A DNA stretch of 64,000 nucleotides from positions 248,001 to 312,000 of IMG/VR virus record IMGVR_UViG_3300046517_002304; one strand, written 5' to 3'. This document shows, in pieces, positions 2,727 to 29,277 of the stretch. A model generated the notes under the pieces. The model did not search any database, was not told the origin of the DNA, and saw only the letters and a list, made by a program, of their open reading frames with translations. Both the position numbers and the translations under genes were made by a program. The number at the start of each line of letters is the position of its first letter. The first letter of the stretch is position 1.

Positions 2727-2730
2727 TCAT

Positions 2731-2994: not shown

Positions 2995-3303
2995 TTAATC
3001 ATTAAAACCAACTTGTTCTCTGTACTTAAAAATAAACTCACAAGCCTTGTCTATGCTGGTGCTTCCTACACCATTTGGCGCAGTTACACTTTCAGAATAC
3101 AGCACTTGTGCCGTACTGGCTCCATAAACTGTAATAAAAGAGCCATTAATGGTAAGGCTAACTCTCCCAGCTTCGGTAGAGCCGTCTTTTGTTTTAATTA
3201 CGTGAAGCGGCCAGAACGTTTCTGAATCTAGGTAAGCGACCTGATCGTAAGCATCTTTCCAGCATCTTTCCCCTGATACATTTATACTAACGCTAGCTTT
3301 CAT
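2995..3303 (-). CDS. MKAEVKI-family protein
   Basis: MKASVSINV...IFKYREQVGF. Confidence 0.8.
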   Translation of the reverse strand: MKASVSINVSGERCWKDAYDQVAYLDSETFWPLHVIKTKDGSTEAGRVSLTINGSFITVYGASTAQVLYSESVTAPNGVGSTSIDKACEFIFKYREQVGFND

Positions 3304-3305
3304 AA

Positions 3306-4139
3306 TTACTCGTCTTTCTTATCAGTACTCTTATACATTCGCTCGCCATTAATCCACCACTGCACATTTCCGCTGGCGAAAACAATAGCCGGGCCTTCTT
3401 CTCTATGCAGCTTACCTTCCCTAAACCAGAACATTTCTGCATCTGACGTAATAACAGCAGGGCCATTATCACGGTGCTGTATTCCATCTTTATACCAGTA
3501 TTGACTTCCGTCCGATGTTTGTATGGCAGGACCATTATTGCGATGTAGCTTCCCGTCTAAATACCATAATTGACTACCGTCTGGTGCCATTACAGCCGGC
3601 TTTCCTACTCGGTGATATTTTCCATTAACCCACCATTCTTTTCTTGATTTATATTCTTTTTCAGGCGTGGAACCATGAACCTCTTCAAAAATAATTCTTG
3701 CTGGACCATCTACTCTATGTCTCTCCCCTTCAGAAAACCATTCTTGGTCTCCATTATTACGAATAATGGCAGGCCCACCGTCTCTATGTAATCTTCCTTG
3801 TTTATACCAGCATTGATCGCCATTACTAAAAATCATCGCCGGACCATCTTCCCGATGGAGAAGACCATGTTGGAACCATTCGGCCGTATACCAATTATCT
3901 TGGTAAACGATTGCTGGACCAGAATCTCTATGATATGATCCATACTCGTCAAACCAACGTTCAGTGTTGCCATTTGAATCAGTCTTATACCGTGGAACAT
4001 TAGCGAAACCCCGAGCAACTCCATCAATCGCGGGGCGAGATACAAAATCTTCTCCACGTACAACTTTTGTCCAGATTAGGTATGACCCAAACCCCAGCAA
4101 AAGCAAAAACAACACACGCATTAAATTATTTTTACTCAT
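3306..4139 (-). CDS. Membrane-anchored HRxDGPA-repeat protein
   Basis: N-terminal hydrophobic segment; about 8 W..G..HR.DGPA repeats. Confidence 0.85.
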   Translation of the reverse strand: MSKNNLMRVLFLLLLGFGSYLIWTKVVRGEDFVSRPAIDGVARGFANVPRYKTDSNGNTERWFDEYGSYHRDSGPAIVYQDNWYTAEWFQHGLLHREDGPAMIFSNGDQCWYKQGRLHRDGGPAIIRNNGDQEWFSEGERHRVDGPARIIFEEVHGSTPEKEYKSRKEWWVNGKYHRVGKPAVMAPDGSQLWYLDGKLHRNNGPAIQTSDGSQYWYKDGIQHRDNGPAVITSDAEMFWFREGKLHREEGPAIVFASGNVQWWINGERMYKSTDKKDE

Positions 4140-4165
4140 TTTTTTCTCCTTGTTATTTTTTTCTT

Positions 4166-4396
4166 TCAGGTATTAATAAATTTTAAAACTTCAATAGCAA
4201 TCACGGCTACCCCAACGCCTATGAAGCACATTACTCCAAACATTAACATGACATATCTGGAGTTACTTCTATTTCCTGCCCGACACAGACCACAATCGTA
4301 TATCAATTCATGTCCGTCTATAATCATAGTTCGGCATGTTATATTATGCTTCTTACATTTATATCGGAAGATCAACGTCCTTACTTTAGCTTTCAT
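4166..4396 (-). CDS. MKA-start protein with Cys motifs and C-terminal TM helix
   Basis: CKKH...CGLC; hydrophobic tail. Confidence 0.7.
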   Translation of the reverse strand: MKAKVRTLIFRYKCKKHNITCRTMIIDGHELIYDCGLCRAGNRSNSRYVMLMFGVMCFIGVGVAVIAIEVLKFINT

Positions 4397-4706
4397 AATC
4401 GTCCTTGTATACTTTTCGGTAACGGTAAATAGTTGAGCGCATTTCCGTCAAAGTGTATTCCTTAAAAAACGCCGCACCAAAATCCTTCATCTTACCACTA
4501 CAAATTACACTTCCATCGTCTTTAAAAATAGTCAAAACACTGCTGGTCATTCCTCCTCCATTAGGCGGCACCACTCTACCGACTAATATAAGGTCTTTAT
4601 AAAAACGCTTTTCCAGCCTATTGTTAACCATATAAAAAGAAAGCGAATATTCGTATGTATTCTTTTTTTTCTCAGGCCCTACAGTAATTTTAACTTCAGC
4701 TTTCAT
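4386..4706 (-). CDS. MKAEVKI-family protein
   Basis: MKAEVKITVG. Confidence 0.85.
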   Translation of the reverse strand: MKAEVKITVGPEKKKNTYEYSLSFYMVNNRLEKRFYKDLILVGRVVPPNGGGMTSSVLTIFKDDGSVICSGKMKDFGAAFFKEYTLTEMRSTIYRYRKVYKDDYES

Positions 4707-4978
4707 TTGTTTAATCCATATGCGTTACGATAATAATATACTTCATGTCCAGCGATATCATTAGATTCATCAGACATTTCATACTTAAATGGACGATATG
4801 AGTATGACGCGCCAGAATTATCCTGATAAATATACAATCTTTTCTGGGAATAAACAACATACCCAACACAGTAATTGCCTGGAGTGTAAATGTATACAAT
4901 GCTATACAAATCACCGCTGGGTATAAAATGATATGGGTGTTCTTTAAAACGAATCTTATAATCAACAATGGCCTTCAT
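4703..4978 (-). CDS. MKAEVKI-family protein
   Basis: MKAIV...HPY...YYYRNAYGL. Confidence 0.8.
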   Translation of the reverse strand: MKAIVDYKIRFKEHPYHFIPSGDLYSIVYIYTPGNYCVGYVVYSQKRLYIYQDNSGASYSYRPFKYEMSDESNDIAGHEVYYYRNAYGLNK

Positions 4979-5253
4979 TCCATTCCCTTGCCAGTCCGAT
5001 ATTCATGTAACGCAATACCAAAGGCATCATCGCTAGAATACCATTTTTTAAAAACACCTTTGTTTACCGCAAATCCATCTCCTGTTTCGCCATAAACAAC
5101 AACTAAGCCGTCAAGATCAAACCTCACGCCTACTTTATGATTATTATCATCACGGTAAATCGTACAATATGGCATGCCACTACCATAACATACTTTTTTT
5201 ATCGCATATGGATGTTCGATATTTACTTCTTTTATAATTACTTCAGCCTTCAT
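4975..5253 (-). CDS. MKAEVKI-family protein
   Basis: MKAEVII...LHEYRTGKGME. Confidence 0.85.
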   Translation of the reverse strand: MKAEVIIKEVNIEHPYAIKKVCYGSGMPYCTIYRDDNNHKVGVRFDLDGLVVVYGETGDGFAVNKGVFKKWYSSDDAFGIALHEYRTGKGME

Positions 5254-5516
5254 ACATGCCCCAATTCTCTGAAACGAGTTTCATGAACATATTTCACTAT
5301 TTCATACAAAGCCTCATTAGGGTCAATAGTACGCAGTATATCACGATGATGATTTAAACAAGCATGAACGCGAACAGTGTTGTCAGACCAGTTAATCAAA
5401 CCTGCCAATCCACCATCCTGTAAAGATACTCTAATCATCTGATATGAAATATATTTCAGTCTATAGCCGAACATATCCGGCAACACTTCCAATTCAAATG
5501 AGTAAGGCTTAGTCAT
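5250..5516 (-). CDS. Hypothetical protein within array
   Basis: ATGA-coupled at both ends. Confidence 0.75.
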   Translation of the reverse strand: MTKPYSFELEVLPDMFGYRLKYISYQMIRVSLQDGGLAGLINWSDNTVRVHACLNHHRDILRTIDPNEALYEIVKYVHETRFRELGHV

Positions 5517-5779
5517 TCGTATCCCATCAACTTTCTTAGTTCGTGAATCCTAATGGCAATCTGATCGTCGGTTTCATTTTTACTAATACCAATATCACAA
5601 GTATTCTGAGAATTGTTATTAAAAACACTAGCCTCATCGCGCCTACGATTAATATACCCAACAAAAAATGTATTATCGCTATTCCTTAAGTCCGATCCAT
5701 AGAATGTCTTTTTAAGAGTATAAGGATGACTATTATTTTTTTCCTCAGACCCTAAAGTAATTTTAACTTCAGCTTTCAT
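5513..5779 (-). CDS. MKAEVKI-family protein
   Basis: MKAEVKITLG...IHELRKLMGYE. Confidence 0.85.
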   Translation of the reverse strand: MKAEVKITLGSEEKNNSHPYTLKKTFYGSDLRNSDNTFFVGYINRRRDEASVFNNNSQNTCDIGISKNETDDQIAIRIHELRKLMGYE

Positions 5780-6045
5780 TCCAACCCCTTTGATTTACGA
5801 TATTCGTGTAGAGCAATGCCGAAAGCATTATTACTATCATAATGTTTGTTAAAGCCTATTGCTTCAGAAGTTATATCATTATGATTGTAGAACATCACGC
5901 TACCGTCACCATGAAATCTAACGCCTATAGGGTTATCGTTGTTATCTTTCCAAACCGTATAATGATTACCGCCCAAAACATAAACTTTTTCTGTTTTGTA
6001 AATGATGTTATTTGCTAACTCTCTTACGGTAACTTCAGCTTTCAT
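5776..6045 (-). CDS. MKAEVKI-family protein
   Basis: MKAEVTV...LHEYRKSKGLE. Confidence 0.85.
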   Translation of the reverse strand: MKAEVTVRELANNIIYKTEKVYVLGGNHYTVWKDNNDNPIGVRFHGDGSVMFYNHNDITSEAIGFNKHYDSNNAFGIALHEYRKSKGLE

Positions 6046-6320
6046 TAGTTTCTCCCCAAATAATACTTGCGATAAAGATTTACCTTAAACAAACATGCTT
6101 CTGGCGTAATCCCATCAGGAAGATCAATAGTAGTTACACGCTTCTCCGCTACTTCATCATATATTGAAATTGTGCAATCGGTTAAATTAATAGCAGCAAC
6201 TCTTCCAAGGTTTTTGGCGAAAGGAATCAATAAATAAACAGCACCTTTGGTTGCAGTGGAGTTCCAGTGTATCCGATAAGGCGAATCTTCAACCATTGAT
6301 ATTTTGACTTCAGCTTTCAT
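6045..6320 (-). CDS. MKAEVKI-family protein
   Basis: Start moved to MKAEVKIS (ATGA overlap). Confidence 0.8.
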   Translation of the reverse strand: MKAEVKISMVEDSPYRIHWNSTATKGAVYLLIPFAKNLGRVAAINLTDCTISIYDEVAEKRVTTIDLPDGITPEACLFKVNLYRKYYLGRN

Positions 6321-6604
6321 TCCCATCCCTTTGATTTACGATATTCGTGTACTATCTGGCCAAATTCATCATCACTAGTGTATTGATTAATAGGTAGATT
6401 TAATTCACCATAGTCAAAAGTATTTCCATTTTTATTATAGACAGCAAAACTTTTAGCATTATCATTACTCTCCGCAAACCTAAGAGCGGCTTTATGATTA
6501 TTACCACAGATATAAAGCGTATAATATAACGAACCATTATCGTGGTGCGTTTTCTCAATCTTATATGGGTTACTACAAACAGATACCTTAACAGTTGCTT
6601 TCAT
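6317..6604 (-). CDS. MKAEVKI-family protein
   Basis: MKATVKV...VHEYRKSKGWE. Confidence 0.85.
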   Translation of the reverse strand: MKATVKVSVCSNPYKIEKTHHDNGSLYYTLYICGNNHKAALRFAESNDNAKSFAVYNKNGNTFDYGELNLPINQYTSDDEFGQIVHEYRKSKGWE

Positions 6605-6855
6605 TCGTACCCTTGTTCTTTTCTAAACTCATAAATCCTATGAGCTACTTCATCATTCGTCTCATTTACCAAAGTCATAAACTTAGAAGCAGTCTGACCG
6701 TGTAGATCAAACGCCACTATCGTATTTTGAGGACGATTTACATACCCAACAAAACCATTAGCATTACGAAAGTCCATTCCATATGCCGTAGAATGAAGCG
6801 TGTAAGGGTGCTTGTTAGACCTAGACCCTACAGTAATTTTAACACTAGCCTTCAT
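6601..6855 (-). CDS. MKAEVKI-family protein
   Basis: MKASVKI...IYEFRKEQGYE. Confidence 0.85.
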   Translation of the reverse strand: MKASVKITVGSRSNKHPYTLHSTAYGMDFRNANGFVGYVNRPQNTIVAFDLHGQTASKFMTLVNETNDEVAHRIYEFRKEQGYE

Positions 6856-7118
6856 TCGTATCCCTGTTCTTTCCTAATCTCATAAATCCTACAGGCTGCT
6901 TCGTTATTAGACTCGTAAAGAGAGAGAGGAAAACTAGCAAGAACAACACCATTATTATAAACAAATACAGTGTGATTTGAGCGATCTATCACACCAACCG
7001 TTTTCTCAAAACCATGCTGGTCTATTACAAATGTACTCTGAGTGCCTTCAGACATGCTATAAGGGTGGCTATTATTTTTTTTCTCAGGCCCCAAAGAGAT
7101 TTTAACAGTTGCTTTCAC
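6852..7118 (-). CDS. MKAEVKI-family protein (GTG start)
   Basis: GTGA overlap; (M)KATVKI...IYEIRKEQGYE. Confidence 0.8.
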   Translation of the reverse strand: MKATVKISLGPEKKNNSHPYSMSEGTQSTFVIDQHGFEKTVGVIDRSNHTVFVYNNGVVLASFPLSLYESNNEAACRIYEIRKEQGYE

Positions 7119-7387
7119 GTAGGCCACCCTTTACTTAAACGAAATTCATAGATTCTCTTAGCCACTTCTTCTAACATCTCCTCGTCTTTACCCGATTCTA
7201 CTGTAGTTAAGTGGTCTATACCATTAAAGGCTTTATTATAAATATTCATGTAAGAGTCACCAACATTCATCTTTCCAACAACTACATTCCCTGTAAAAGG
7301 TTTCTCCCAAAAAATATAATATCTACCATCCATAGTCCCAATCCAATAAGGATGCCCGCCAACAGTTATTTTAACTTCAGCTTTCAT
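7115..7387 (-). CDS. MKAEVKI-family protein
   Basis: MKAEVKITVGGHPY...IYEFRLSKGW. Confidence 0.85.
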   Translation of the reverse strand: MKAEVKITVGGHPYWIGTMDGRYYIFWEKPFTGNVVVGKMNVGDSYMNIYNKAFNGIDHLTTVESGKDEEMLEEVAKRIYEFRLSKGWPT

Positions 7388-7659
7388 GTTTCCCATCCAC
7401 TATACAAGCGAAATTCATAAATTCTCTTAGCAGCATTTTCTAAAGATTCCGGTGTAGCTTTTCCATCTATCCAGTCATGATGATGCACTCCGTTAAAACT
7501 CTTATTATAAACGGACACATACTTTTCATCCTTAGCCCATCTTCCTACAACCTTCGATGGATATACTCCTTTAAGCTTAACCATAATATAAGTATACCCA
7601 AATCCTTTAGAGAAATAGTAAGGATGCCCACCAACTGTAATTTTAACTTCTGCTTTCAT
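7384..7659 (-). CDS. MKAEVKI-family protein
   Basis: MKAEVKITVGGHPY...IYEFRLYSGW; close paralog of neighbour. Confidence 0.85.
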   Translation of the reverse strand: MKAEVKITVGGHPYYFSKGFGYTYIMVKLKGVYPSKVVGRWAKDEKYVSVYNKSFNGVHHHDWIDGKATPESLENAAKRIYEFRLYSGWET

Positions 7660-7898
7660 AGGTCGTGATTTTCCACATAACTGGCAATTACTGATGCTAC
7701 CTTTTTCAAATTTTTCGTCTCATAAACAGCATTAAATACCTGCATTCCCTTTTTATCAAATATTTCTAACGTACCGCTCTCGGTCAAAAACCTAGCAACC
7801 ATCGTATAATGGTCATAAAAATAATCCCATCCATAACAATGCATAATACGATAGTCCCCAATCATACTATAAACAATTATAGAAGATAATGCCTTCAT
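7656..7898 (-). CDS. MKA-start array protein
   Basis: MKALSS; coupled to downstream gene. Confidence 0.75.
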   Translation of the reverse strand: MKALSSIIVYSMIGDYRIMHCYGWDYFYDHYTMVARFLTESGTLEIFDKKGMQVFNAVYETKNLKKVASVIASYVENHDL

Positions 7899-7926
7899 AG
7901 GAATCCCTTAATATCCTTTAGAAAAA

Positions 7927-8217
7927 TCATTCCGTCCCAAAAAACTGTTTTCGGGAAGACCAAATTTGTTCGGCAACCTGATCCCTGGTCATATTCTCAT
8001 GACAACTAAAAGTAAATAAAGGACTACATTTATTATCATAAACAACAAATTTCTTACATGATTTAGACTTACTGTCATAGCTCATTGCGCCTACATCACG
8101 AAGTAATTTATAACTATAAACCCTATAATTAAAATCCCAGTCAAGCGCCGTCATGTGAATGCTATATGGATGATCACCTTCTGGTTTATTCACAGATAAT
8201 TTTACTTCAGCTTTCAC
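7927..8217 (-). CDS. MKAEVKI-family protein (GTG start)
   Basis: KAEVKLSV...HPY. Confidence 0.8.
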   Translation of the reverse strand: MKAEVKLSVNKPEGDHPYSIHMTALDWDFNYRVYSYKLLRDVGAMSYDSKSKSCKKFVVYDNKCSPLFTFSCHENMTRDQVAEQIWSSRKQFFGTE

Positions 8218-8477
8218 GCATCACCATTTATTCTTTGTAGTTCTGCGGCTAAGTCATTAGCGTCCCAATATTTTTGACTATAAGTACCAACAATTATTTG
8301 CAATCCTGATAAAGATACATCGTACCGTTCAAGGATATAGACACCAAGATTATTATCTCTAATCCTTCCCTTCTTCTCGCTAAAACCAGAGAAAACATTA
8401 TAATAACCATTGCCAATGTATACCGCATAATACAAAGGCTGGTGATTAATCTTCCAATCTGATAATATTGCTTTCAT
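8214..8477 (-). CDS. MKA-start array protein
   Basis: MKAILS; coupled. Confidence 0.75.
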   Translation of the reverse strand: MKAILSDWKINHQPLYYAVYIGNGYYNVFSGFSEKKGRIRDNNLGVYILERYDVSLSGLQIIVGTYSQKYWDANDLAAELQRINGDA

Positions 8478-8782
8478 ATATGTCCTAATTCCATCATTCT
8501 TTTAGCAAGAATAAATGTAAAAGACTCATACTCATTTGGCAAATATTCCCCTTCCCAAATTGTATTAACTTGATCATCAAACACTCTCATTACATTACTA
8601 TTTCCATCACAGGCACCAATGCTATAATAAGCGCCTTCTTCAGTAATCCTAGCAAATGAATAAAACTTCTTATTAAGATGTTTATACATTATAAAAGGAT
8701 GATATTTTGACGAACTGATAACATCGTATTCAATATATTTTGGAAATTTAAATACAACATCAATACTAACATTGGCTTTCAT
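8474..8782 (-). CDS. MKAEVKI-family protein
   Basis: MKANVSI. Confidence 0.75.
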   Translation of the reverse strand: MKANVSIDVVFKFPKYIEYDVISSSKYHPFIMYKHLNKKFYSFARITEEGAYYSIGACDGNSNVMRVFDDQVNTIWEGEYLPNEYESFTFILAKRMMELGHI

Positions 8783-9059
8783 GTTTACACCCAAATGCCT
8801 TACGTTTTTTGTAAATATGCTCTTCTATTTCTTCTTTACTCATAGCCTTATAATCACTTATAGATAACGTTTTAGATCCAACTCCTTTATTGGCATATAC
8901 TCTTAAGTCACGGATATATCCTGTACTGTTTGGCTTTTGATAACCACATACCAATTCGTTAGTGCTCTCAAGATAAGCGGCTATTCTTCCTAAAGTTGGA
9001 CTATCCCTAAAGACATAACCGTATCGGCTACCAAGACTAAGTTTAACTTCTGCCTTCAT
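8766..9059 (-). CDS. MKAEVKI-family protein
   Basis: MKAEVKLSLG. Confidence 0.8.
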   Translation of the reverse strand: MKAEVKLSLGSRYGYVFRDSPTLGRIAAYLESTNELVCGYQKPNSTGYIRDLRVYANKGVGSKTLSISDYKAMSKEEIEEHIYKKRKAFGCKHESQC

Positions 9060-9340
9060 TGTTTTAACCAATCTCTCTTTAATAATTCATTATGAACATA
9101 GTGAATTAAATGATCATGATTCGCAAATTTAGGAATTCCGTTGATTACTATATACTGCATATTATTAGGATCAGTTGAGCCATATAAACAGATTTGTTCC
9201 GAACCACATAAATGAACTGCTACTAGATTACCCATTACCCAAGGAGGTTGACCTACGTGAACATGTGTCTCTAAAGGAAGCACATCCTGAGCACAATAAT
9301 CAAATATCTTGTTTACTTCTATTTTAACTTCGGCTTTCAT
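9056..9340 (-). CDS. MKAEVKI-family protein
   Basis: MKAEVKIEV. Confidence 0.85.
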   Translation of the reverse strand: MKAEVKIEVNKIFDYCAQDVLPLETHVHVGQPPWVMGNLVAVHLCGSEQICLYGSTDPNNMQYIVINGIPKFANHDHLIHYVHNELLKRDWLKQ

Positions 9341-9597
9341 GGTTTCTCCAATCCAACCGAGATTCTGTATTCATGTAGCTTAGCTCCTACTGCTTCTAAA
9401 TCATCACCTTTTATACTAAGATAAATCGGAAGGCTATTATCTGATTGAATAACAGCCAACATTTTCTTATTCACGTAATACTTGCCAACTATTGCCATAC
9501 CATCTTGAGATATAAACCATTTCTCGTTATTTTTAAGATGATAAATTACATATGGATTATCATTGTTAACAATGGATATTTTAACCGAAGCTTTCAT
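9337..9597 (-). CDS. MKAEVKI-family protein
   Basis: MKASVKIS...LHEYRISVGLE. Confidence 0.85.
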   Translation of the reverse strand: MKASVKISIVNNDNPYVIYHLKNNEKWFISQDGMAIVGKYYVNKKMLAVIQSDNSLPIYLSIKGDDLEAVGAKLHEYRISVGLEKP

Positions 9598-9843
9598 TCT
9601 AATCCCTTTTTCATACGAAACTCATAAATGAACTCAGCTATTTCATCTAAATCACTCATATGAGGAGACAAATACACCGTCTCCCCCATTCCAACGTCAA
9701 CCTGTAGTGAGTTGTTTTCTTTTTTATACATGGCAACAACATGATGTCCACCAGGTTTGCAGAAATAAGTTCCGCCATCATATTGATAATACCAATATCG
9801 CGGTTCTTTTTTTTTCAAGAAAAACTTTTACTTCAGCTTTCAT
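9594..9843 (-). pseudogene. MKAEVKI-family gene frameshifted in an A9 run
   Basis: ATG 9843 MKAEVKVFLE; removing one A of the run at 9807-9815 restores the frame to IYEFRMKKGLE. Confidence 0.75.
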
Positions 9844-10091
9844 TAATCTTCCCACCCTTGATTAAACCTGTACGAATACACCCATCTAGCAACTTCATTT
9901 ACGTCTTTTGACTTAGTAGGAACAAAGAACGTGGACCCATTTGATCGGTAGATCTCTATTCTTTTTTTATTCGTGTCAAACTTTGCCGCTAAGTTGTTGT
10001 TATTTTTATTAGTGAACCAATACAACTGTGGGAAATCAGTAATATTATACGGAGGCTTGTTATTAACAGTGATTTTTACGGTTGCTTTCAT
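9843..10091 (-). CDS. MKAEVKI-family protein
   Basis: MKATVKIT...YSYRFNQGWE. Confidence 0.85.
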   Translation of the reverse strand: MKATVKITVNNKPPYNITDFPQLYWFTNKNNNNLAAKFDTNKKRIEIYRSNGSTFFVPTKSKDVNEVARWVYSYRFNQGWED

Positions 10092-10336
10092 AATTCCCAT
10101 CCTTGCACTGTTCTATAACTGTGTAGCCAAATCCCCGCTTCATCTACGTTAGTATTCGACCACCCGACAGTAATATTCTTTCCATTTGGAGGGAATATCA
10201 ATAGTCTACTGCCTAAAAACAATTTACCGTATATAGAAGATCCATCAGGTGGCGCGAACCAAACTTGGCCTTCTGCAACATAATGTGCCATATACGGATG
10301 TTTTTTATTAATAAAAATTTTGATTTCAGCTTTCAT
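10088..10336 (-). CDS. MKAEVKI-family protein
   Basis: MKAEIKI...LHSYRTVQGWE. Confidence 0.85.
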   Translation of the reverse strand: MKAEIKIFINKKHPYMAHYVAEGQVWFAPPDGSSIYGKLFLGSRLLIFPPNGKNITVGWSNTNVDEAGIWLHSYRTVQGWEL

Positions 10337-10581
10337 TAACCTTCCCACCCTTGCGCTACGCGATAGTTGTATAGGTAGTTTCCTATTTCATCTATGTCTA
10401 CGCTTGATGTACCAATGGTAATTTCATTTCCAACAGGCGAAAACATTACCATTTTGACTCCGAGCAAGAATTTACCGAATACGACATCGCCGTTAGTAAA
10501 CCAAACTTGTTTATCAGAGTAATGGTACTTCTTATAAGGATGCTTGTTATTAATAACGGTGATTTCTACAGATGCCTTCAT
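10336..10581 (-). CDS. MKAEVKI-family protein
   Basis: MKASVEI...YNYRVAQGWE. Confidence 0.85.
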   Translation of the reverse strand: MKASVEITVINNKHPYKKYHYSDKQVWFTNGDVVFGKFLLGVKMVMFSPVGNEITIGTSSVDIDEIGNYLYNYRVAQGWEG

Positions 10582-10829
10582 GGTTGCTCCCATCCCTGCT
10601 CTACTCTGTAGCGATGAATCAAATTTCCTGCATATTCTACGTCCGTACACATAGTAGAAACAATGATGCCTCCTCCTTTTGGAGGACATATCACTATTTT
10701 ACTGCCCCAAAAGAGCTTGCCGAATACCTTGTTTCCGTTCGGTGACGTAAACCAGGTTTGGAATTCGGAATATTGAAGTAAACCGTACGGATGTTTTTTA
10801 CCAATTGTTATTTTTACTTCAGCTTTCAT
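10578..10829 (-). CDS. MKAEVKI-family protein
   Basis: MKAEVKITIG...HRYRVEQGWE. Confidence 0.85.
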   Translation of the reverse strand: MKAEVKITIGKKHPYGLLQYSEFQTWFTSPNGNKVFGKLFWGSKIVICPPKGGGIIVSTMCTDVEYAGNLIHRYRVEQGWEQP

Positions 10830-11074
10830 TCCAATCCTTTTTTCAGCCGGATGAAATAAATCGCTCTGCCAACGTCATCTATTGTATCTTGCGTTTTAGT
10901 CTTAAATATCGCTACGGCCTTACTTTCTCCAAAGCAAGCATGCGCAACTGAAATTCTGGCGAAATATTTGCCGACTAATTTATTTTCATTATTTCTAAAC
11001 TCTATTCTGCGAGGTCCATCATAAGCCCATTTATATGGATGTTTTAGAACAGAGATAATTACGGACGCTTTCAT
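10826..11074 (-). CDS. MKAEVKI-family protein (first gene of operon)
   Basis: MKASVII...IRLKKGLE. Confidence 0.85.
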   Translation of the reverse strand: MKASVIISVLKHPYKWAYDGPRRIEFRNNENKLVGKYFARISVAHACFGESKAVAIFKTKTQDTIDDVGRAIYFIRLKKGLE

Positions 11075-11083
11075 GATTTCACC

Positions 11084-11112
11084 ACAATACCATAAAACCC
11101 CTGTAGAGTCAA
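11084..11112 (-). promoter_or_regulatory. Sigma70-type promoter for the MKAEVKI array
   Basis: TTGACT-17 nt-TATTGT, ending 9 nt before ATG 11074. Confidence 0.7.
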
Positions 11113-11425
11113 TAGGATTTTTTCCTGGTATTTTTGGGAAAACCCCTTGTGGCGATAAAGGGTATTTCCTGGATTTTTTTGAAATGGCCGAATGCGGAAA
11201 ATGTCCCTGAATGTTTATTAAAATGGCAGGGTGCCGGATGAATATGGAACCTTTAAATACCCCTTATGTTTCTAAAGGGGCGGGGTACCGGGAAAATAAA
11301 AGATGAGGGGAATGAGGATGGCTGTCCTGGTGGCGTAGCCCCCCATCTTACTCAGACCCCCCACATGTTCCGGAAGATAATTTATAGCAGCAAGGTTCTG
11401 CTACCAGTTATCCCTAGAGCATGTC

Positions 11426-11647
11426 CTACGCTGCGGTAGGGATGAACTCCTGATACCCGCTCTGTCTATCCAACGCAACCGCTACCTCTCCCGCACTCAC
11501 CGTCAAGTCCCCATGAACCTTGCCCCCTACCAGCACCCGCTTGGTATCCCGCAGTCCCACACTCCAGTGGTGGCAGCAGGTCAGCCCGCTCTCCCTGTCC
11601 CGCACGTAGACCAGACCATTCGGCAGCAGCTCGGCAGTCAGCATCAT
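11426..11647 (-). CDS. Hypothetical protein
   Basis: SD AGGAG; octamer upstream. Confidence 0.7.
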   Translation of the reverse strand: MMLTAELLPNGLVYVRDRESGLTCCHHWSVGLRDTKRVLVGGKVHGDLTVSAGEVAVALDRQSGYQEFIPTAA

Positions 11648-11668
11648 ACTTGGCTCTCCTTACAACCA

Positions 11669-11899
11669 TTAAAGGATAACTAACTGATCCGTGAACGTGT
11701 TCAGCGTGCCTGTCCCGCCCGATGCCCGGTAAGCCTCCCAGCATCGGGCCGCATAGACGACTTGCCCCAGCGAAACGAATGGCAGCCTCTTGCTGGCTTC
11801 CCGCTGGAACTCAGCCGCCTGCTGCCGATTGAACAGGCGAACTAACTCAACCCCGCCGGGCACCTTACGCAAGGCAAGTTGCGACGTTATCCGCATCAT
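11669..11899 (-). CDS. Hypothetical protein
   Basis: Start at MMRITS with AAGGGG SD. Confidence 0.6.
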   Translation of the reverse strand: MMRITSQLALRKVPGGVELVRLFNRQQAAEFQREASKRLPFVSLGQVVYAARCWEAYRASGGTGTLNTFTDQLVIL

Positions 11900-12108
11900 G
11901 GGCAACCCCCTTAATAATAAACAAACAGGTGAACAGGTGTATAGAAAGGCCCACCCGCGGCGTAGATTGAAACGCACGCGGGGGGCGGTAGCAGCTCTAC
12001 TTCCTCATTCCCTGAATGACCGCGATGACGCCCGCAAAGTAGTAGGGGGTTGCTTCCGTCATGTTACTCTCCTGTAAGAGGTCGGGGATACAGAAGGGTA
12101 GGGATAAC

Positions 12109-12372
12109 TCAGGTCGTAAAGGTTCCGTCCGCGAACGTCTGGAGAATCTGGACTTTCTTATCGTGGTTGCCGTCGTCGGCTTTGCGGTTAACCGTCAGTT
12201 CCGCCAGGGTCGCTTCTCCCGCGTTCTGATAGGCGGGAAGGAATTCCTTTACCCATTGCTTGAAGTGAGTCTCAGCGGCGTGTAGAGCGTGCCCAGGCGT
12301 AGCATCGTTGAAGACGACAATCCCTTGAACAATCTGGCGAACCATTTTGAGGACGACGTAAGAATAAATCAC
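12109..12372 (-). CDS. Hypothetical protein
   Basis: SD AGGAG; stop in octamer. Confidence 0.7.
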   Translation of the reverse strand: MIYSYVVLKMVRQIVQGIVVFNDATPGHALHAAETHFKQWVKEFLPAYQNAGEATLAELTVNRKADDGNHDKKVQILQTFADGTFTT

Positions 12373-12381
12373 GATGACTCC

Positions 12382-12591
12382 TTAGAGGGCGGTATAAACC
12401 CAGCCTGAATCGGGCCGACTATTCCAACGGTCAATCAGCTTCAGGAAATCTTGCCGATTGTAACAGTAAACGGTCTTCTCTCCGTCATGGTTGCCGTTGC
12501 CGTTGTACCGAATCCAGTGGTAGCGAAATTGTCGCATGCCAATATGATCGTTGCGGGAATACCAGACGTTGGCTGACGAATCGTGTTCCAT
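12382..12591 (-). CDS. Hypothetical protein
   Basis: Tightly packed ORF. Confidence 0.65.
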   Translation of the reverse strand: MEHDSSANVWYSRNDHIGMRQFRYHWIRYNGNGNHDGEKTVYCYNRQDFLKLIDRWNSRPDSGWVYTAL

Positions 12592-24197: not shown

Positions 24198-24677
24198 ATG
24201 CAAAAGTTTAACTGCGGGACTTGTGGAAAAGAAGTTTATCGACCGACTTGGAGAATCAAAAAATGTTTAACTGGCATTTTTTACTGTAGCCAGAAATGTT
24301 GCTGTGATGCTAATAACAAAAAAAAGGCGGATCAGGTTAGTGGTATGAGAAAAGGCGAAGTACTAAACCACTGTTCCACGTCCAGTAGGTTCGCAACGAT
24401 ACGGAAAAATGCTAGGCGAACATACCTTGCGTCAGACAAACCTAAGTGCTGCCTAGTATGCGGGTATTCTAAGCATATTGAAATTTGCCATGTTCAGGGG
24501 ATTACAACATTCCCCGATGAGACGAAGTTAATCGTTATCAACGATCTGACAAATCTCGTTGCTTTATGTCCGACCCATCATTGGGAGTTAGACAATAAGC
24601 AGCTTGACGAAGAAATACTCCCGGAAAGATTCGCACTTTCGACCCCCGGGTTAGAAACCCGATGCTCTATCTGCTGA
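24198..24677 (+). CDS. HNH endonuclease with N-terminal Cys-rich zinc finger
   Basis: CLVC...EICHV...NLVALCPTHH; antisense to surrounding genes. Confidence 0.8.
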   Translation: MQKFNCGTCGKEVYRPTWRIKKCLTGIFYCSQKCCCDANNKKKADQVSGMRKGEVLNHCSTSSRFATIRKNARRTYLASDKPKCCLVCGYSKHIEICHVQGITTFPDETKLIVINDLTNLVALCPTHHWELDNKQLDEEILPERFALSTPGLETRCSIC

Positions 24678-24688
24678 GCTACGAGAGC
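24616..24688 (-). tRNA. tRNA-Arg(TCT)
   Basis: Cloverleaf: GCTCTCG/CGGGAGT acceptor, TTTCTAA loop; atypical T-loop TGCGAAT. Confidence 0.85.
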
Positions 24689-24744
24689 AACTGACAGACA
24701 ACAATGGATAACTCAGGAGTTCCTGAGTTATCCTTACCTGAAAT

Positions 24745-26148: not shown

Positions 26149-26178
26149 AATCGGTTCCTTTAATTACTAAAGGATAAC

Positions 26179-26442
26179 TCAGCCGCGAAGATACAGCCGT
26201 TCACCCTTCACGATGACGTAGCAACTGCCGGCGTTGCTGTAGCAGATACAGTAAACGCGATACAGCTTCGTATCGCCGTTGAAGCGGAGCATTTTGTCAG
26301 TGCTGATTTTGCTACCGTAGCCGTCTTCCCCTTGCCCTGGGGCTAACTGAAGCATACCACGGCGAGGAACAGGCCGCTCAATCAACTCATAGTTGTCGGC
26401 GTATGTAATCGCCGGGCCACAAGATCCAGAGAGGATAGACAT
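26179..26442 (-). CDS. Phage hypothetical protein (GYG.KI.T...RVYCICYSNAGS motif)
   Basis: SD GGAG; stop in octamer. Confidence 0.75.
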   Translation of the reverse strand: MSILSGSCGPAITYADNYELIERPVPRRGMLQLAPGQGEDGYGSKISTDKMLRFNGDTKLYRVYCICYSNAGSCYVIVKGERLYLRG

Positions 26443-26525
26443 TGAATACTCCGGTGATTTGTAAGGGGGATTTACATCATGGCGACTGTCGAACCCGCCG
26501 CGATAACCCCCAGATGCAGGACGAT

Positions 26526-26722
26526 GGATAACTAGCTGCCCCCATAGTTATCCATAGCTAAGGTACGGACTATCATTTAGATTCCCCTGCTAGTTATCCA
26601 TAGCTAAGGTACGGAACAATACTAGGATGCCCCCGTTAGTTATCCATAGCTTAGGTCCGGCCGAACATAGCTGGGGCCAGTCGAAATAAAAAATGCCCCT
26701 CAGCCAATCAAGGCTGAGGGGA
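26526..26722. repeat. Three direct repeats TAGTTATCCATAGCT(A/T)AGGT at 46-bp period, plus terminator
   Basis: Octamers at 26546, 26592, 26638. Confidence 0.85.
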
Positions 26723-26801
26723 CTAACTAAGGCGGGACATTATGCCCGCAATCGTGGAGGTCCGCCAATCAGGCGGGCCAGTTGAGTCTAACTATGGATA
26801 A

Positions 26802-27590
26802 CTATTCGTCGCTCTCTTCCCATTCTTCATCCCGAGCAACTTCAGCCGTTGCCGTGCTCCGCCCCGGTGCCGCTGTCTTTTCTACCGTAATATAATTCAG
26901 GACACGCATAGACCGCGTATCGCGGACATACTCTAGGTTTCGCTCCTGTTGTAATTCGTGCGGTAGCTTGGCGTATGACGACGGGTAGAGGGAGGGGTCC
27001 AATACCCAAACGGTTTCGGCCTCCAATCCCTTAGCTTTATGCGTCGTCGTCAACAATACCGCGTGCTTTACGTCGCCGGCGTCATTGACTTCCGCGAAGA
27101 TACTGCTAATTAATTCCTTCAACGCTTTCGCAGTATCGGTCCCCTCAGTCAGAGCGATGAGAGTATCGCATTTATCATTAAGAGTTTCCGCCGCACGACC
27201 CGCATTTTTCCGCTTTTCCAGTTTCGTCAACTCCCGACCGCGATATGTTTCAATCCGTTCAATGAGAGTCGGGATATCGTCGGTCTTCATCCGATCAATC
27301 AGATTGATGAGGCCCTCCCCAAAATCGTTGCGGCCTGCAATCTGGACTTTGAGATGACGCCTCAGAAGTTTCCAGACAAGCGTTGCAAGGGGAGCATTGT
27401 TCCGACATTGAACCATATCCCCTGGGGCAATCAAATCAATCGCCGCTGCCAGAGGCATCGTATTGACTTCCCCCTGAGGGGCTGATGCCATTGCTTCAAA
27501 GGCAGGAACGAACGCCTGAGCAATTTCAACGTGCGACTTCGGGCACCGTCGCGTCTTCGTCAGCGTCAAGAGAGTCAAGCCGCGAGACAT
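26802..27590 (-). CDS. UvrD/Rep-like SF1 helicase, C-terminal part
   Basis: Motifs IV (TRRCP), V (TTHKAKGLE), VI (ERNLEYVRDTRS). Confidence 0.85.
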   Translation of the reverse strand: MSRGLTLLTLTKTRRCPKSHVEIAQAFVPAFEAMASAPQGEVNTMPLAAAIDLIAPGDMVQCRNNAPLATLVWKLLRRHLKVQIAGRNDFGEGLINLIDRMKTDDIPTLIERIETYRGRELTKLEKRKNAGRAAETLNDKCDTLIALTEGTDTAKALKELISSIFAEVNDAGDVKHAVLLTTTHKAKGLEAETVWVLDPSLYPSSYAKLPHELQQERNLEYVRDTRSMRVLNYITVEKTAAPGRSTATAEVARDEEWEESDE

Positions 27591-27639
27591 ACTTGTTATC
27601 CTTTAAAAGTGTGCGGAGTTGATGGAAGTTAAAGGATAA

Positions 27640-28605
27640 CTAGGCGGATAGACGACGCTCAAACAATTGCATAGAATCTTCCGCTGCTCCGCAAAAGCCG
27701 TAGATAGCCTGATTCTCATCGCCCACCGCGATAATCCTGCCATTCTTGCCCGCGACCGTGAACGCCATTTCAATTCGGCACATATTCAGGTCTTGAACTT
27801 CGTCAACCAGCACGTTATCATAAGTCGGCAACGTAATCTTATTGACAATCGGAATCCAAATTTGATCGTCAAAATCAAATTCCCGCGTATTCTTGCGTGC
27901 GGCATCCAAAACCTTTGGAACCAATTCAAAAATCCGCTCTACTTCGTCGCCAATTTCAACGCTATGATATTCGCAGAGTTGCGTCAGATTTTCGGTTGTC
28001 GGTGCCAGCAATTTGTTTTTGCAGAGGGAAACCAACTTGACGACCGCATACTTGATACGGTTTTTATCGTTGTCGTCCATCCCCTCAGGGAGCATTGCAT
28101 CAACGCAATTATGCGTTTTGTATTCCTTCAATTCGGCACCCTTATAGAATGCCCGAATTGCACTCCAGCCGAAAGCATGGAACGTGCTAGTGGCCGTTCC
28201 CTCAGGCATGCGTGCTTTCAACTCTCGGGCGATTTTGTTATTAAACGCCAGAGCGATGACGCTACCAGTGAGGCGGGCGGCACCCATGACAATCGTTGTC
28301 GTCTTGCCCGTTCCCGCCAGTGCTTTGATAATCAGGTGGGAAGTCCCATTCTCCATTTCTTCCCATATCGCAATCTGCTGATCCGACCCCTTAAAGGTGG
28401 GGAGAGGAATTTTCGTAATCACCTCCTTAACATACTTGGCTTTCTGAGTATGTTTGCACTGGACTTCACCGGCGGCCTTATCAAACCCCTCAGGATTACG
28501 GGCCGACTTTTCATAGTAGCCCGGGCAACCATAAAACTTGCCGAAACTACTTTTCCGAGCAACCAGCGTTTTGTCGCACTTAGGGCAGAAATATTCGCTC
28601 ATCAT
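27640..28605 (-). CDS. UvrD/Rep-like SF1 helicase, N-terminal part with topoisomerase-type C4 zinc finger
   Basis: ALAGTGKT, STFH, VDEVQD, VGDENQAIYGF; CPKC...FYGC. Confidence 0.9.
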   Translation of the reverse strand: MMSEYFCPKCDKTLVARKSSFGKFYGCPGYYEKSARNPEGFDKAAGEVQCKHTQKAKYVKEVITKIPLPTFKGSDQQIAIWEEMENGTSHLIIKALAGTGKTTTIVMGAARLTGSVIALAFNNKIARELKARMPEGTATSTFHAFGWSAIRAFYKGAELKEYKTHNCVDAMLPEGMDDNDKNRIKYAVVKLVSLCKNKLLAPTTENLTQLCEYHSVEIGDEVERIFELVPKVLDAARKNTREFDFDDQIWIPIVNKITLPTYDNVLVDEVQDLNMCRIEMAFTVAGKNGRIIAVGDENQAIYGFCGAAEDSMQLFERRLSA

Positions 28606-28999: not shown

Positions 29000-29233
29000 C
29001 TAGGAATTCAGCAAATCCGCAATTTCTTGATTACGGATAACTACTGGTTTCGTGATATCGATGTTGAGGGCGGCTCTTGCCCCTTCCAAGTCACCCTCTT
29101 CTAGATAAAACGTGTCGGCGGCATCAGACAAACCGATATCGACTAGCTGATTAACCAGCTCAGCAACCCGCTTCTTACTCATACGAACGGGAGCGTCAAC
29201 CTTAACCAGCAGATTCACCGTTCGTTTTTTCAT
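29000..29233 (-). CDS. Hypothetical protein
   Basis: Start region is tandemly duplicated. Confidence 0.65.
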   Translation of the reverse strand: MKKRTVNLLVKVDAPVRMSKKRVAELVNQLVDIGLSDAADTFYLEEGDLEGARAALNIDITKPVVIRNQEIADLLNS

Positions 29234-29277
29234 GGTTTTCCTGATGGAGTTCGTTTTTTCATGGTTTTCCTGATGGA
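29220..29277. repeat. Exact 29-bp tandem duplication
   Basis: GTTCGTTTTTTCATGGTTTTCCTGATGGA x2. Confidence 0.9.

What the first reader, a model, noticed from the sequence alone, without database searches (positions are those of the whole stretch)
26526..26722. Iteron-like triplet at exact 46-bp period downstream of the helicase
Seen: TAGTTATCCATAGCT(A/T)AGGT with octamers at 26546, 26592 and 26638, in a ~350-bp gene-free gap. They are the last exact inverted copies noticed in the window. Inference: a phased multi-site array such as a replication origin or loading site, or stacked single arms of the long element.
Basis: partly seen in the sequence, partly recalled or inferred. Interest (0 to 1): 0.6.

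Follow-up and report, generated by a model that had tools for sequence, protein, structure and literature searches.

The report
Stacked reverse copies of a phage gene-start signal
The three evenly spaced repeats are real, but they are not origin iterons: they are a triplicated, backward-facing copy of a short promoter-like word that this 511-kb soil phage places in front of about 160 small genes.

Summary
TAGTTATCCATAGCT(A/T)AGGT(A/C)C starts at 26545, 26591 and 26637, an exact 46-bp period, in the 359-bp gap between a UvrD-like helicase ORF and an 87-aa gene.

The iteron/origin reading is not supported.
- The core AGTTATCCNT is the most over-represented word of the 511-kb phage genome. About 160 copies lie on the gene (minus) strand and 16 on the plus strand of the window.
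- All copies sit in one 150-kb block of small, lineage-specific genes.
- It lies just behind intrinsic terminators. Its TAG is the upstream stop codon in 66 of 159 cases. It lies exactly 8 nt before the ATG in 46 of 159 cases, and it also heads a tRNA.
- Two distant relatives (458 kb and 595 kb) have the same block architecture with different words: ATACCAACTAG and AGCTGTAC.

Best reading: a phage-specific single-block promoter, probably read by a phage sigma-like factor. The triplet is a 46-bp module of the recurring terminator/promoter junction element, triplicated and pointing backwards. No RNA data were available, so promoter function is inferred, not shown.

The parts
26545..26566 (+). 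Copy 1 of the 22-nt long-form word TAGTTATCCATAGCTAAGGTAC. It forms an inverted pair with the gene-proximal copy at 26524-26533, separated by an 11-nt G+C-rich spacer.
26591..26612 (+). Copy 2 of the long-form word, 22/22 identical to copy 1. The 24 nt before it look like a decayed partner arm plus spacer.
26637..26658 (+). Copy 3 of the long-form word, 20/22 identical to copy 1.
26524..26533 (-). Gene-proximal copy of the core AGTTATCCAT on the coding strand. It lies 81 nt upstream of the ATG (26442) of the 87-aa gene, and a GGAG ribosome-binding site precedes that ATG.
26794..26804 (-). Coding-strand copy TAGTTATCCAT. Its TAG (26802-26804) is the stop codon of the helicase C-terminal ORF.
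26684..26721 (-). Intrinsic terminator for minus-strand transcription: a 10-bp G+C-rich stem (26696-26705 / 26712-26721) with a 6-nt loop, followed by a T-run on the minus strand.
   Evidence: (I10)
26684..26786 (-). About 100 nt between the 26794 copy and the terminator tail. It folds into three hairpins (z = -4.8), two of which share a UGAUUGG loop. It is a candidate small RNA unit.
26179..26442 (-). Downstream 87-aa gene. It matches phrog_3436 (function unknown) and has coding score 0.13.
26802..27590 (-). UvrD-like helicase, C-terminal half (PF13361; phrog_1967 profile positions 426-671).
27632..27641 (-). Copy of the core word (AGTTATCCTT) at the junction between the two helicase ORFs. 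Its TAG is the stop codon of the N-terminal ORF.
27640..28605 (-). UvrD-like helicase, N-terminal half (PF00580; phrog_1967 profile positions 150-420) with a zinc ribbon.

Best explanation
The triplet is not an origin. It is three stacked, backward-facing copies of the phage's own gene-junction signal.

The core word AGTTATCCNT, read on the minus (coding) strand, heads about 160 small genes, a tRNA and a terminator-bounded non-coding unit, all inside one 150-kb accessory-gene block. I read it as a single-block, phage-specific promoter. A phage-encoded specificity factor would direct RNA polymerase to it; the genome has two gp55-like proteins, a 180-aa protein with a weak sigma region 2 match, and a 215-aa sigma-70-family protein. 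Transcription would start about 9 nt downstream. That gives leaderless mRNAs where the ATG sits exactly 8 nt after the word, and short leaders with a ribosome-binding site elsewhere.

In the G+C-rich distal 15 kb of the block, operon-sized units of about 2.5 kb are separated by a composite element. In order along the coding strand it reads: terminator, long-form word, spacer, long-form word inverted, 11-12 nt, gene-start word, gene.

At 26.5 kb, the 46-bp module made of the inverted long-form word plus spacer plus partner arm has been triplicated by slippage or unequal exchange. This explains the exact period. The 22-nt word has been kept intact in all three copies, while the partner arms of the two outer copies decayed.

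The three plus-strand copies most likely bind the same factor facing backwards. They would either launch antisense transcripts into the terminator, small-RNA region and helicase 3' end, or compete with the forward promoter 11 nt away.

Shown: the anatomy, the counts, the spacing, and the conservation of the architecture in relatives. Inferred: promoter function, the start-site position, the factor, and the effect of the reverse copies.
For: Scale and confinement:
- The core is the top 10-mer of the genome.
- There are 160 minus-sense copies between 255 and 415 kb and almost none elsewhere.
- The genes behind the copies are not paralogs.

Position relative to genes:
- The distance from the word to the ATG is exactly 8 nt in 46 of 159 copies and 11 nt in 15.
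- The 8-nt class has no Shine-Dalgarno sequence. The class at 18-60 nt carries AGGAG-type sites.
- In the 71 copies whose ATG lies 18 nt or more downstream, positions +7 and +8 are pyrimidines (49/71, 52/71) and +9 is a purine (53/71), which is the pattern of a transcription start.
- The 8 nt after the word are A+T-rich, with consensus TAACAATY.

Position relative to terminators:
- Strong minus-strand intrinsic terminators are followed by a copy within 5-27 nt. In four long elements the gap is a fixed 24-27 nt.

Non-coding targets, which argue against a translation signal:
- tRNA-Arg starts 14 nt after a copy.
- In relative G001 a tRNA-Lys starts 16 nt after its own word.
- In LR756511.1 an isolated copy sits 293 nt upstream of a 12-tRNA array.
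- The 26794 copy is followed by about 100 nt of structured RNA and a terminator.

Lineage specificity:
- Relatives with 42-46% portal identity have the same block with different words.
- In those relatives the stop codons are built into the word in the same way.
- This pattern points to a co-evolving phage factor rather than host sigma-70, 16S rRNA or DnaA.
- Sigma-like genes are present and mostly conserved in the relatives.

Triplet as a module copy:
- The alignment of the seven long elements shows the shared architecture.
- Unit identities are 22/22, 20/22 and 20/22 in the word against 14/24, 10/24 and 8/24 in the rest.
- One plus-strand long-form copy (23893) lies upstream of a real plus-strand gene, an HNH endonuclease.
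Against: - No RNA data exist for this phage in the runs found, so no transcription start has been seen.
- No phage RNA polymerase was found, and no factor has been tied to the word.
- The long-form copies, including the triplet, lack the pyrimidine-pyrimidine-purine pattern. Their downstream 8 nt (AGCTAAGG) are less A+T-rich than in the gene-start form, so they may bind without firing.
- Most plus-strand copies have no credible plus-strand gene behind them.
- In G001 many words are followed directly by a G+C-rich hairpin and a T-tract. This looks like a terminator placed after the supposed promoter, although it could equally be a 5' stabilising hairpin.
- The spacer length is exactly 24 nt in both intervals despite 40-65% sequence divergence.
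Confidence: 0.55

Rival explanations
1. RNA-level element. The word acts in the transcript, as a cleavage or processing site that cuts polycistronic RNA into gene-sized mRNAs, or as a binding site for a phage RNA-binding protein. The inverted copies are then 'anti-words' that pair with the forward copies to make long imperfect stems (RNase III-type sites or masking hairpins). The triplet would offer three alternative partners for the copies at 26794 and 26524.
For: - The word sits at nearly every gene junction, like a punctuation mark.
- The forward and inverted long forms can form stems of about 21 bp. The 26443-26806 minus-strand RNA folds with the 26794 copy paired to an inverted copy, and the 26524 copy paired to another (z = -3.5). 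The plus strand folds even better (z = -5.0).
- The fixed 8-nt distance to the ATG would also follow from a defined cleavage point.
Against: - Mismatches between the forward and inverted long forms are not compensated (for example element 17.9k).
- The two outer triplet copies have lost their partner arms yet keep the 22-nt word intact. This argues that the word is read by itself as DNA, or that gene conversion keeps it intact.
- Copies directly behind strong terminators would rarely be transcribed from upstream.
- A processing site 14-16 nt upstream of tRNAs is redundant with RNase P.
Confidence: 0.2
2. Cassette-boundary or recombination signal. The word and its short leader form a mobile regulatory cassette. 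Its repeated copies drive gain, loss and shuffling of small accessory genes, in the manner proposed for PeSL elements or, more loosely, integrons. The triplet is a scar of that unequal exchange. This reading can coexist with promoter function.
For: - Block genes are almost all lineage-specific: only 4-6 of about 150 have a homolog in either relative, while core genes are 40-50% identical.
- The word carries stop codons in two frames, so it terminates an upstream ORF in either of those two frames.
- Whole leader cassettes (word plus about 30 nt plus ribosome-binding site) recur nearly identically.
- A helicase gene is split exactly at a junction word.
- G+C content rises to 0.50-0.52 at one end of the block in all three genomes.
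- PeSL papers propose the same role for terminator/promoter cassettes in T4-type phages (PMC2839356, PMC4122927).
Against: - No tyrosine integrase was found (one search shows no skew inflection; one search shows no PF00589 match).
- Most junctions have only a 10-13-nt single word with no attC-like structure.
- No polymorphism was seen among samples.
- There is no direct evidence of exchange at the word.
Confidence: 0.15
3. Replication origin. This could be a classical iteron array, or a transcription-primed origin of the T4 oriF or T7 phi1.1A/B type, in which tandem promoters next to a helicase gene prime leading-strand synthesis.
For: - There are three tandem copies with exactly conserved spacing despite diverged spacers, next to a helicase gene.
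- T4-type phages use promoter-plus-unwinding-element origins, and T7's primary origin is two tandem phage promoters (established knowledge).
- An A-rich run lies 26-36 nt downstream of copy 3.
Against: - The word is dispersed about 176 times.
- 46 bp is 4.4 helical turns.
- The gap is 48-52% G+C, and the A-run is the tail of the minus-strand terminator.
- The neighbour is a split UvrD-type repair helicase, not an initiator or replicative helicase.
- Cumulative GC skew has no extremum at genome position 274.5 kb.
- The array is unique to this genome. The relatives have at most one tandem pair (33 nt apart).
Confidence: 0.06
4. Cluster of host DnaA boxes (TTATCCAT(A) against the consensus TTATCCACA) that binds or titrates the host initiator.
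For: The core contains TTATCC, and with N = A it matches 8 of 9 positions of the E. coli consensus (established knowledge; sequence).
Against: - Box position 7 is free: A 55%, C 17%, G 17%, T 10%. The invariant flanks (AG before, T after) are not DnaA-box features.
- The functionally equivalent words in the two relatives bear no resemblance to a DnaA box.
- The strict co-orientation with genes and the fixed distance to the ATG are unexplained by DnaA binding.
Confidence: 0.02

Closest known systems
PeSL elements (promoter-early stem-loop cassettes) of T4-type myoviruses (Arbiol et al. 2010, PMC2839356; Comeau et al. 2014, PMC4122927)
   Same: Both are composite intrinsic terminator plus promoter units in intergenic regions of T4-related phages. 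Both are concentrated in hyperplastic regions full of small lineage-specific ORFs. Their sequence is conserved within a phage and differs between lineages. Tandem copies occur, and both are proposed drivers of gene shuffling.
   Different: The PeSL promoter part is sigma-70-like (-35, N17, -10) or Mot-box type. Here it is a single 10-20-nt block with no sigma-70 resemblance and no room for a -10 element before the ATG. There are about 176 copies in one 150-kb block. The word has built-in stop codons and a fixed 8-nt distance to many start codons. Inverted copies and a G+C-rich block end are also present.
Single-block phage promoters: T7/T3/SP6 class (about 17-23 bp, lineage-specific) and T4 late promoters (TATAAATA read by gp55)
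   Same: Both are one contiguous conserved block, strictly oriented, lineage-specific, followed by an A+T-rich stretch and a purine start. The number of copies scales with the number of transcription units. A gp55-like sigma is encoded here.
   Different: No single-subunit or multisubunit phage RNA polymerase gene was detectable. The word is unrelated to TATAAATA. The start site is not mapped. Many units would be leaderless.
Iterons of plasmid and phage origins (lambda ori, P1 oriR, R6K, pSC101) and the 43-bp sopC repeats of F
   Same: Both are several direct repeats of about 20 nt in a non-coding gap, at a regular period.
   Different: The word is not confined to one locus. The period is not an integral number of helical turns. 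There is no initiator or partition gene, no unwinding element and no skew signal.
Integron cassette arrays (for example the Vibrio superintegron with species-specific VCR repeats)
   Same: Both have one to two hundred small, mostly unknown, co-oriented ORFs, each separated by a repeat that is conserved within the array and lineage-specific.
   Different: There is no integron integrase. Most repeats are 10-13-nt single words without attC secondary structure. The repeat sits at the 5' side, tightly coupled to the start codon, and also heads tRNA genes.
Correia/REP-type small inverted-repeat elements of bacteria
   Same: The long elements are about 100-160 bp with 21-nt inverted arms, are intergenic, and could carry outward signals and form hairpins in RNA.
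   Different: The arms share their core with about 160 single, non-palindromic gene-start copies. There is no sign of transposition such as target duplications.

Membership tests
Iteron-type replication origin | Repeat sequence essentially confined to the origin (and incompatibility loci) | tested here: not met
   The core occurs 160 times on the minus strand in genome 255-415 kb. 128 copies (both strands) lie in the 64-kb window, 16 of them on the plus strand within its first 32 kb.
Iteron-type replication origin | Repeats phased at an integral number of helical turns (typically about 21-23 bp) | tested here: not met
   The period is exactly 46 bp, which is 4.4 turns at 10.5 bp per turn.
Iteron-type replication origin | Adjacent A+T-rich unwinding element and cognate initiator gene | tested here: not met
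   Local G+C is about 0.50. The only A-run is the tail of a minus-strand terminator. The neighbours are a split UvrD-like helicase and an 87-aa protein of unknown function.
Iteron-type replication origin | GC-skew inflection or coverage peak at the site | tested here: not met
   Cumulative skew declines steadily through 260-511 kb with no extremum at 274.5 kb. Only contig-level depth was available, so coverage could not be used.
Iteron-type replication origin | Supports autonomous replication | not testable with these tools
   Needs a replicon assay.
PeSL regulatory cassettes of T4-type phages | Intergenic composite of an intrinsic terminator stem-loop and a promoter | tested here: inconclusive
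   Terminator followed by the word at 5-27 nt is shown. That the word is a promoter is inferred, not shown.
PeSL regulatory cassettes of T4-type phages | Promoter part is a sigma-70-type early promoter (or Mot box plus -10) | tested here: not met
   The word is a single block. No conserved -35 lies upstream. In 46 copies the ATG lies 8 nt after the word, leaving no room for a -10 element and a start site. Sigma-70-like matches are not enriched: 28 against 19.4 +/- 5.3.
PeSL regulatory cassettes of T4-type phages | Located in hyperplastic regions of lineage-specific small ORFs in a T4-related phage | tested here: met
   The portal is T4-like and a gp55-like sigma is present. Block ORFs have a median length of 79 aa, are not paralogs, and are almost all absent from relatives.
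T7-class single-subunit RNA polymerase promoters | Contiguous conserved block of about 17-23 bp, oriented and lineage-specific | tested here: met
   The consensus is tTAGTTATCCNT plus TAACAATY. The relatives use different words.
T7-class single-subunit RNA polymerase promoters | Cognate phage RNA polymerase gene in the genome | tested here: not met
   PF00940 gave no hit, but its control search did not ring either. PHROGs or Pfam scans of the 23 ORFs of 650 aa or more show no polymerase. Five large proteins remain unassigned.
T4 late (gp55) promoters | gp55-family sigma present and a TATAAATA element at -10 | tested here: not met
   A gp55-like gene is present, but the word is unrelated to TATAAATA. 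TATAAATA itself shows no clustering in the block.
DnaA-box cluster | 9-mer TTATNCACA with conserved positions 7-9 | tested here: not met
   Position 7 is free and position 8 is T in 99% of copies. The equivalent words in relatives are unrelated. Binding was not tested.
Integron cassette array | IntI-type tyrosine recombinase and attC sites (57-141 bp imperfect inverted repeats) | tested here: not met
   PF00589 is absent from the genome, with positive controls in 14 of 14 reference genomes. Most junctions carry only the single 10-13-nt word.

The most novel reading that the evidence does not exclude
A clade of huge T4-related soil and freshwater phages (458-595 kb) carries a 100-150-kb 'gene nursery'. 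One to two hundred small, fast-turning-over genes are each fitted with the same portable cassette: stop codon, lineage-specific single-block promoter, and a leaderless or short leader. A dedicated phage sigma-like factor reads that promoter. The block has a G+C-rich growing end where composite terminator/promoter modules duplicate, and the 46-bp triplet is a caught-in-the-act example. This would be a phage-borne, promoter-based functional analogue of an integron, with its own orthogonal transcription code.
Probability: 0.15. Interest if true: 0.8.

Novelty: new variant of a known kind. Interest (0 to 1): 0.5.

Why it matters
If the word is a promoter, it defines an orthogonal, lineage-specific transcription code. 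That code governs roughly a third of a half-megabase phage genome, mostly unknown small genes that probably take over the host or counter its defences. It gives a simple way to pick out that gene class in related uncultured huge phages. It predicts widespread leaderless mRNAs in a T4-related phage.

It also offers a concrete candidate mechanism for how huge phages accumulate and shuffle accessory genes: portable terminator/promoter cassettes with built-in stop codons.

For the scan itself, the lesson is that a locally striking repeat should be checked against the whole genome before it is read as an origin.

Tried and rejected
- Alternative genetic codes. The paucity of long ORFs in the window is not cured by TGA=W, TAG=Q or TAA=Q. 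The rest of the genome is 80-96% covered by standard-code ORFs. The block simply holds short genes.
- Phage RNA polymerase. PF00940, PF00562 and PF00623 found nothing. PHROGs and Pfam scans of the large ORFs found none. The unassigned large proteins L025, L030, L031, L032 and L022 have no tblastn match in relative G001, and L029 has only a weak local one, so none is an obvious conserved polymerase.
- Integron-like system. No tyrosine integrase was found.
- Same-word relatives. There are none in IMG/VR (all single chance hits). There are none in metagenome contigs. The palindrome scan returned only isolated chance palindromes with no further copies. Those loci, some from gut metagenomes, were not pursued further.
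- GenBank phage DNA similarity: none.
- RNA evidence. No RNA run holds the phage, so start sites could not be read. Contig laying showed only identity across samples.
- Rfam. The window gives only three tRNAs. The gap gives only a sub-threshold Spot 42 resemblance: 19 bits against a cut-off of 80.
- Plus-strand genes behind the plus-strand copies. Codon-usage scoring rejects the plus ORFs at 13.0, 19.2 and 21.1-22.0 kb in favour of the overlapping minus ORFs. Only the HNH ORF at 24198-24677 stands.
- Translation-initiation signal, or pairing with 16S rRNA. Rejected as the general function, because the word also heads tRNAs, lies 18-60 nt from many start codons that have normal ribosome-binding sites, and differs completely in relatives.
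- T4 middle (MotA) promoter geometry. Rejected on spacing.

Full report
**1. The observation**

The three copies are there as described. The 22-nt word TAGTTATCCATAGCTAAGGTAC starts at 26545 and 26591. TAGTTATCCATAGCTTAGGTCC starts at 26637. The period is exactly 46 bp. Tandem Repeats Finder scores this as the best tandem array of the window. The gap they lie in is 26443-26801, between two minus-strand ORFs.

Chance is excluded. The 20-mer with up to 3 mismatches has 15 matches against 0 in shuffles. The 9-mer GTTATCCAT has 56 against 0.68 expected.

A contig from an independent sample (X4) covers 26158-26807 without any difference. The array is therefore real DNA, not an assembly artefact.

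**2. Where we are**

The window is positions 248001-312000 of a 511,233-bp virus record with direct terminal repeats. It is held by six soil and rhizosphere metagenome runs.

The phage uses the standard genetic code. It has a T4-like portal, a tail sheath, ribonucleotide reductase and an SbcC-like nuclease. Its closest GenBank record is LR756511.1, a 595-kb uncultured huge phage, with 42% portal identity.

**3. The word is a genome-scale signal, not a local one**

- The core is AGTTATCCNT: N is any base and the following T is 99% invariant.
- It is the most over-represented 10-mer of the genome.
- On the minus strand there are 160 copies between 255 and 415 kb, and almost none in the other 350 kb.
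- That block has few long ORFs and a G+C content that climbs from 0.38 to 0.52 toward its distal end at 260 kb. There it drops sharply to 0.34.
- The genes behind the copies have a median length of 79 aa and are not paralogs.
- Only 4-6 of about 150 have a homolog in either relative.

**4. Anatomy of a junction**

The consensus on the coding strand is tTAGTTATCCNT, followed by TAACAATY or by AAGGA.

- The TAG is the stop codon of the upstream ORF in 66 of 159 copies. A TGA two bases earlier serves in 11 more.
- The next ATG lies exactly 8 nt after the word in 46 copies and 11 nt after it in 15.
- The 8-nt class has no Shine-Dalgarno sequence. Copies 18-60 nt from the ATG have AGGAG-type sites at normal spacing.
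- In the 71 copies whose ATG lies 18 nt or more downstream, +7 and +8 are pyrimidines and +9 is a purine in 53 of 71. This is the same position as the A of the ATG in the 8-nt class.
- Strong minus-strand terminators are followed by a copy within 5-27 nt.
- The word also precedes tRNA-Arg by 14 nt.
- One copy (27632-27641) sits exactly between the two halves of a UvrD-like helicase. Both halves match one PHROG profile back to back, at positions 150-420 and 426-671.

**5. The long elements and the triplet**

A 22-nt long form, AGTTATCCAT-A(G/T)CT(A/T)AGGTAC, occurs 17 times: 12 on the plus strand and 5 on the minus strand. All lie in window 12.8-26.8 kb.

Together with terminators, these copies build a composite element that recurs about every 2.5 kb, at 12.8, 15.4, 17.9, 19.7, 22.2, 23.9 and 26.5 kb. 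Read along the coding strand its order is:

1. terminator
2. 24-27 nt
3. long form, forward
4. a spacer of about 37 nt
5. long form, inverted
6. 11-12 G+C-rich nt
7. gene-start form
8. 8 nt
9. ATG

The finding is the seventh and last element. Here the forward copy (26794-26803) holds the helicase stop codon. Three hairpins follow, including the terminator at 26696-26721. Then comes the inverted long form three times. The gene-start copy at 26524-26533 follows, and it heads the 87-aa gene.

Each 46-bp unit is the 22-nt word plus 24 nt. Those 24 nt align with the G+C-rich spacer plus a decayed copy of the partner arm. The period is therefore the length of a duplicated module.

The word is 20-22 of 22 identical among the copies, while the rest is 8-14 of 24 identical. 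So the word itself is maintained, either by selection or by gene conversion with the other long-form copies. The lost partner arms are not.

**6. Relatives**

Portal homologs led to a 458.8-kb IMG/VR record (G001, 46% identity) and to LR756511.1. Neither carries the word. Both have the same architecture with a word of their own.

- G001 has t(g/a)ATACCAACTAG: 98 copies on one strand at 265-359 kb, with G+C rising to 0.50 at the end of the block.
- LR756511.1 has taAAGCTGTACtaA: 55 copies in a G+C-rich 19-kb zone and about 74 on the other strand over the next 230 kb.
- In both, the word supplies the upstream stop codon in a large share of junctions.
- In both, the word heads tRNA genes or arrays.
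- LR756511.1 has one tandem pair 33 nt apart, and G001 has one inverted pair with a 10-nt spacer. Small stacks and inverted pairs are therefore recurrent by-products of this architecture.

**7. What it most likely is**

The relevant properties are:

- strict co-orientation with genes;
- position just behind terminators;
- use before protein genes, tRNAs and a terminator-bounded non-coding unit;
- an A+T-rich 8 nt followed by a pyrimidine-pyrimidine-purine pattern;
- a completely different word in each lineage.

Together these fit a phage-specific single-block promoter read by a co-evolving phage factor. They do not fit host sigma-70, 16S rRNA or DnaA.

No phage RNA polymerase was found. The genome does encode two gp55-like proteins, a 180-aa protein with a weak sigma region 2 match (E 0.016, below the Pfam cut-off), and a 215-aa sigma with regions 2 and 4. 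Most of these are conserved in the relatives. Proteins with only a sigma region 2, such as T4 gp55, are known to read single-block promoters (established knowledge).

The 8-nt class would give leaderless mRNAs, which explains the rigid spacing.

The plus-strand stack at 26.5 kb would bind the same factor facing the helicase. That would produce antisense transcription across the terminator and small-RNA region, or occlusion of the forward promoter 11 nt away. One plus-strand long-form copy does lie upstream of a real plus-strand gene, an HNH endonuclease. The others do not.

None of this is shown by RNA data, because no RNA runs were available.

**8. Rivals**

- An RNA-level role (processing site, with the inverted copies acting as pairing partners) remains possible. 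The predicted folds are better than shuffled sequence. However, arm mismatches are uncompensated, and the outer triplet copies keep the word without a partner.
- A cassette-shuffling role like that proposed for PeSL elements (PMC2839356, PMC4122927) is compatible with promoter function. It is suggested by the gene turnover, the built-in stop codons and the split helicase.
- An origin, whether iteron-type or promoter-primed, has little support. The word is dispersed, the 46-bp period is non-integral in helical turns, there is no initiator or unwinding element, and there is no skew inflection. The one point in its favour is the exactly kept 24-nt spacer length.
- The resemblance to a DnaA box is coincidental.

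**9. Verdict**

The finding is real but mis-scaled. It is one triplicated module of a genome-wide gene-junction signal. It is closest in kind to PeSL terminator/promoter cassettes and to single-block phage promoters, but it fails the defining sigma-70 feature of PeSL and lacks the polymerase of the T7 class.

I rate it a new variant of a known kind. The triplet itself is of moderate interest. The block architecture it belongs to is more interesting, and I found no description of it in the literature I could search.

Noticed in passing
window 12600-64000 and beyond (genome 255-415 kb); relatives G001 265-359 kb (L120-L124) and LR756511.1 1-250 kb (L131-L143): A 150-kb block of about 160 small, co-oriented, lineage-specific genes, each headed by the same word. 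G+C content rises smoothly from 0.38 to 0.52 toward one end and then drops abruptly. Two relatives with only 42-46% portal identity show the same gradient and architecture with different words. The cause of the G+C gradient is unexplained.
   Followed up: partly
window 26802-28605 (minus strand), junction at 27632-27641: A UvrD-like helicase is encoded as two separate ORFs (321 aa and 262 aa). They match one PHROG profile end to end. They are separated by a junction word whose TAG stops the first half, followed by a 41-nt leader to the ATG of the second half. This is a gene split by the regulatory cassette.
   Followed up: partly
window 26684-26786 (minus strand): About 100 nt between a copy of the word and an intrinsic terminator fold into three hairpins (z = -4.8). 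Two of the hairpins share a UGAUUGG loop. This is a candidate small RNA. Rfam gives only a sub-threshold Spot 42-like match (19 bits, E 0.26) with the same end points.
   Followed up: partly
window about 2300-12500 (genome 250-260.5 kb): A low-G+C (0.34-0.40) stretch with strong GC skew (-0.25) and small minus-strand ORFs. At least 11 of them begin with the same coding words, ATGAAAGCTGAAGT (M-K-A-E-V). This is a paralogous small-gene family just outside the block, without the junction word.
   Followed up: no
window 24198-24733: A plus-strand HNH endonuclease ORF (159 aa) lies inside the otherwise minus-strand block. Its 3' end overlaps tRNA-Arg (24615-24689, minus strand). A perfect 12-bp palindrome made of two copies of the word (24706-24733) sits 14 nt upstream of that tRNA.
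   Followed up: partly
window 29220-29277: A perfect 29-bp tandem duplication (2.0 copies). On the coding (minus) strand it reads through a copy of the word's downstream leader and a start codon (…CATGAAAAAACGAAC…).
   Followed up: no
window 52600-54050: A local G+C island (0.50 against 0.43) with ORFs of about 380-390 codons open on both strands and no Pfam match on either. Copies of the word flank it at 52818 and 53996.
   Followed up: no
G001 340-359 kb (L124), for example 342534, 346390, 350202: In the relative's G+C-rich end, the word is followed immediately by a 9-12-bp G+C-rich hairpin whose base includes the last 4-6 nt of the word, and then by a T-tract. This could be a 5' stabilising hairpin, or a terminator placed after the signal. 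It bears on which side of the word transcription ends and starts.
   Followed up: no
LR756511.1 (L131-L160): This 595-kb relative carries 63 tRNA genes by ARAGORN, including one called with a CUA anticodon (tRNA-Pyl type call). They are arranged in long minus-strand arrays. At least two arrays lie downstream of an isolated copy of that phage's word.
   Followed up: no
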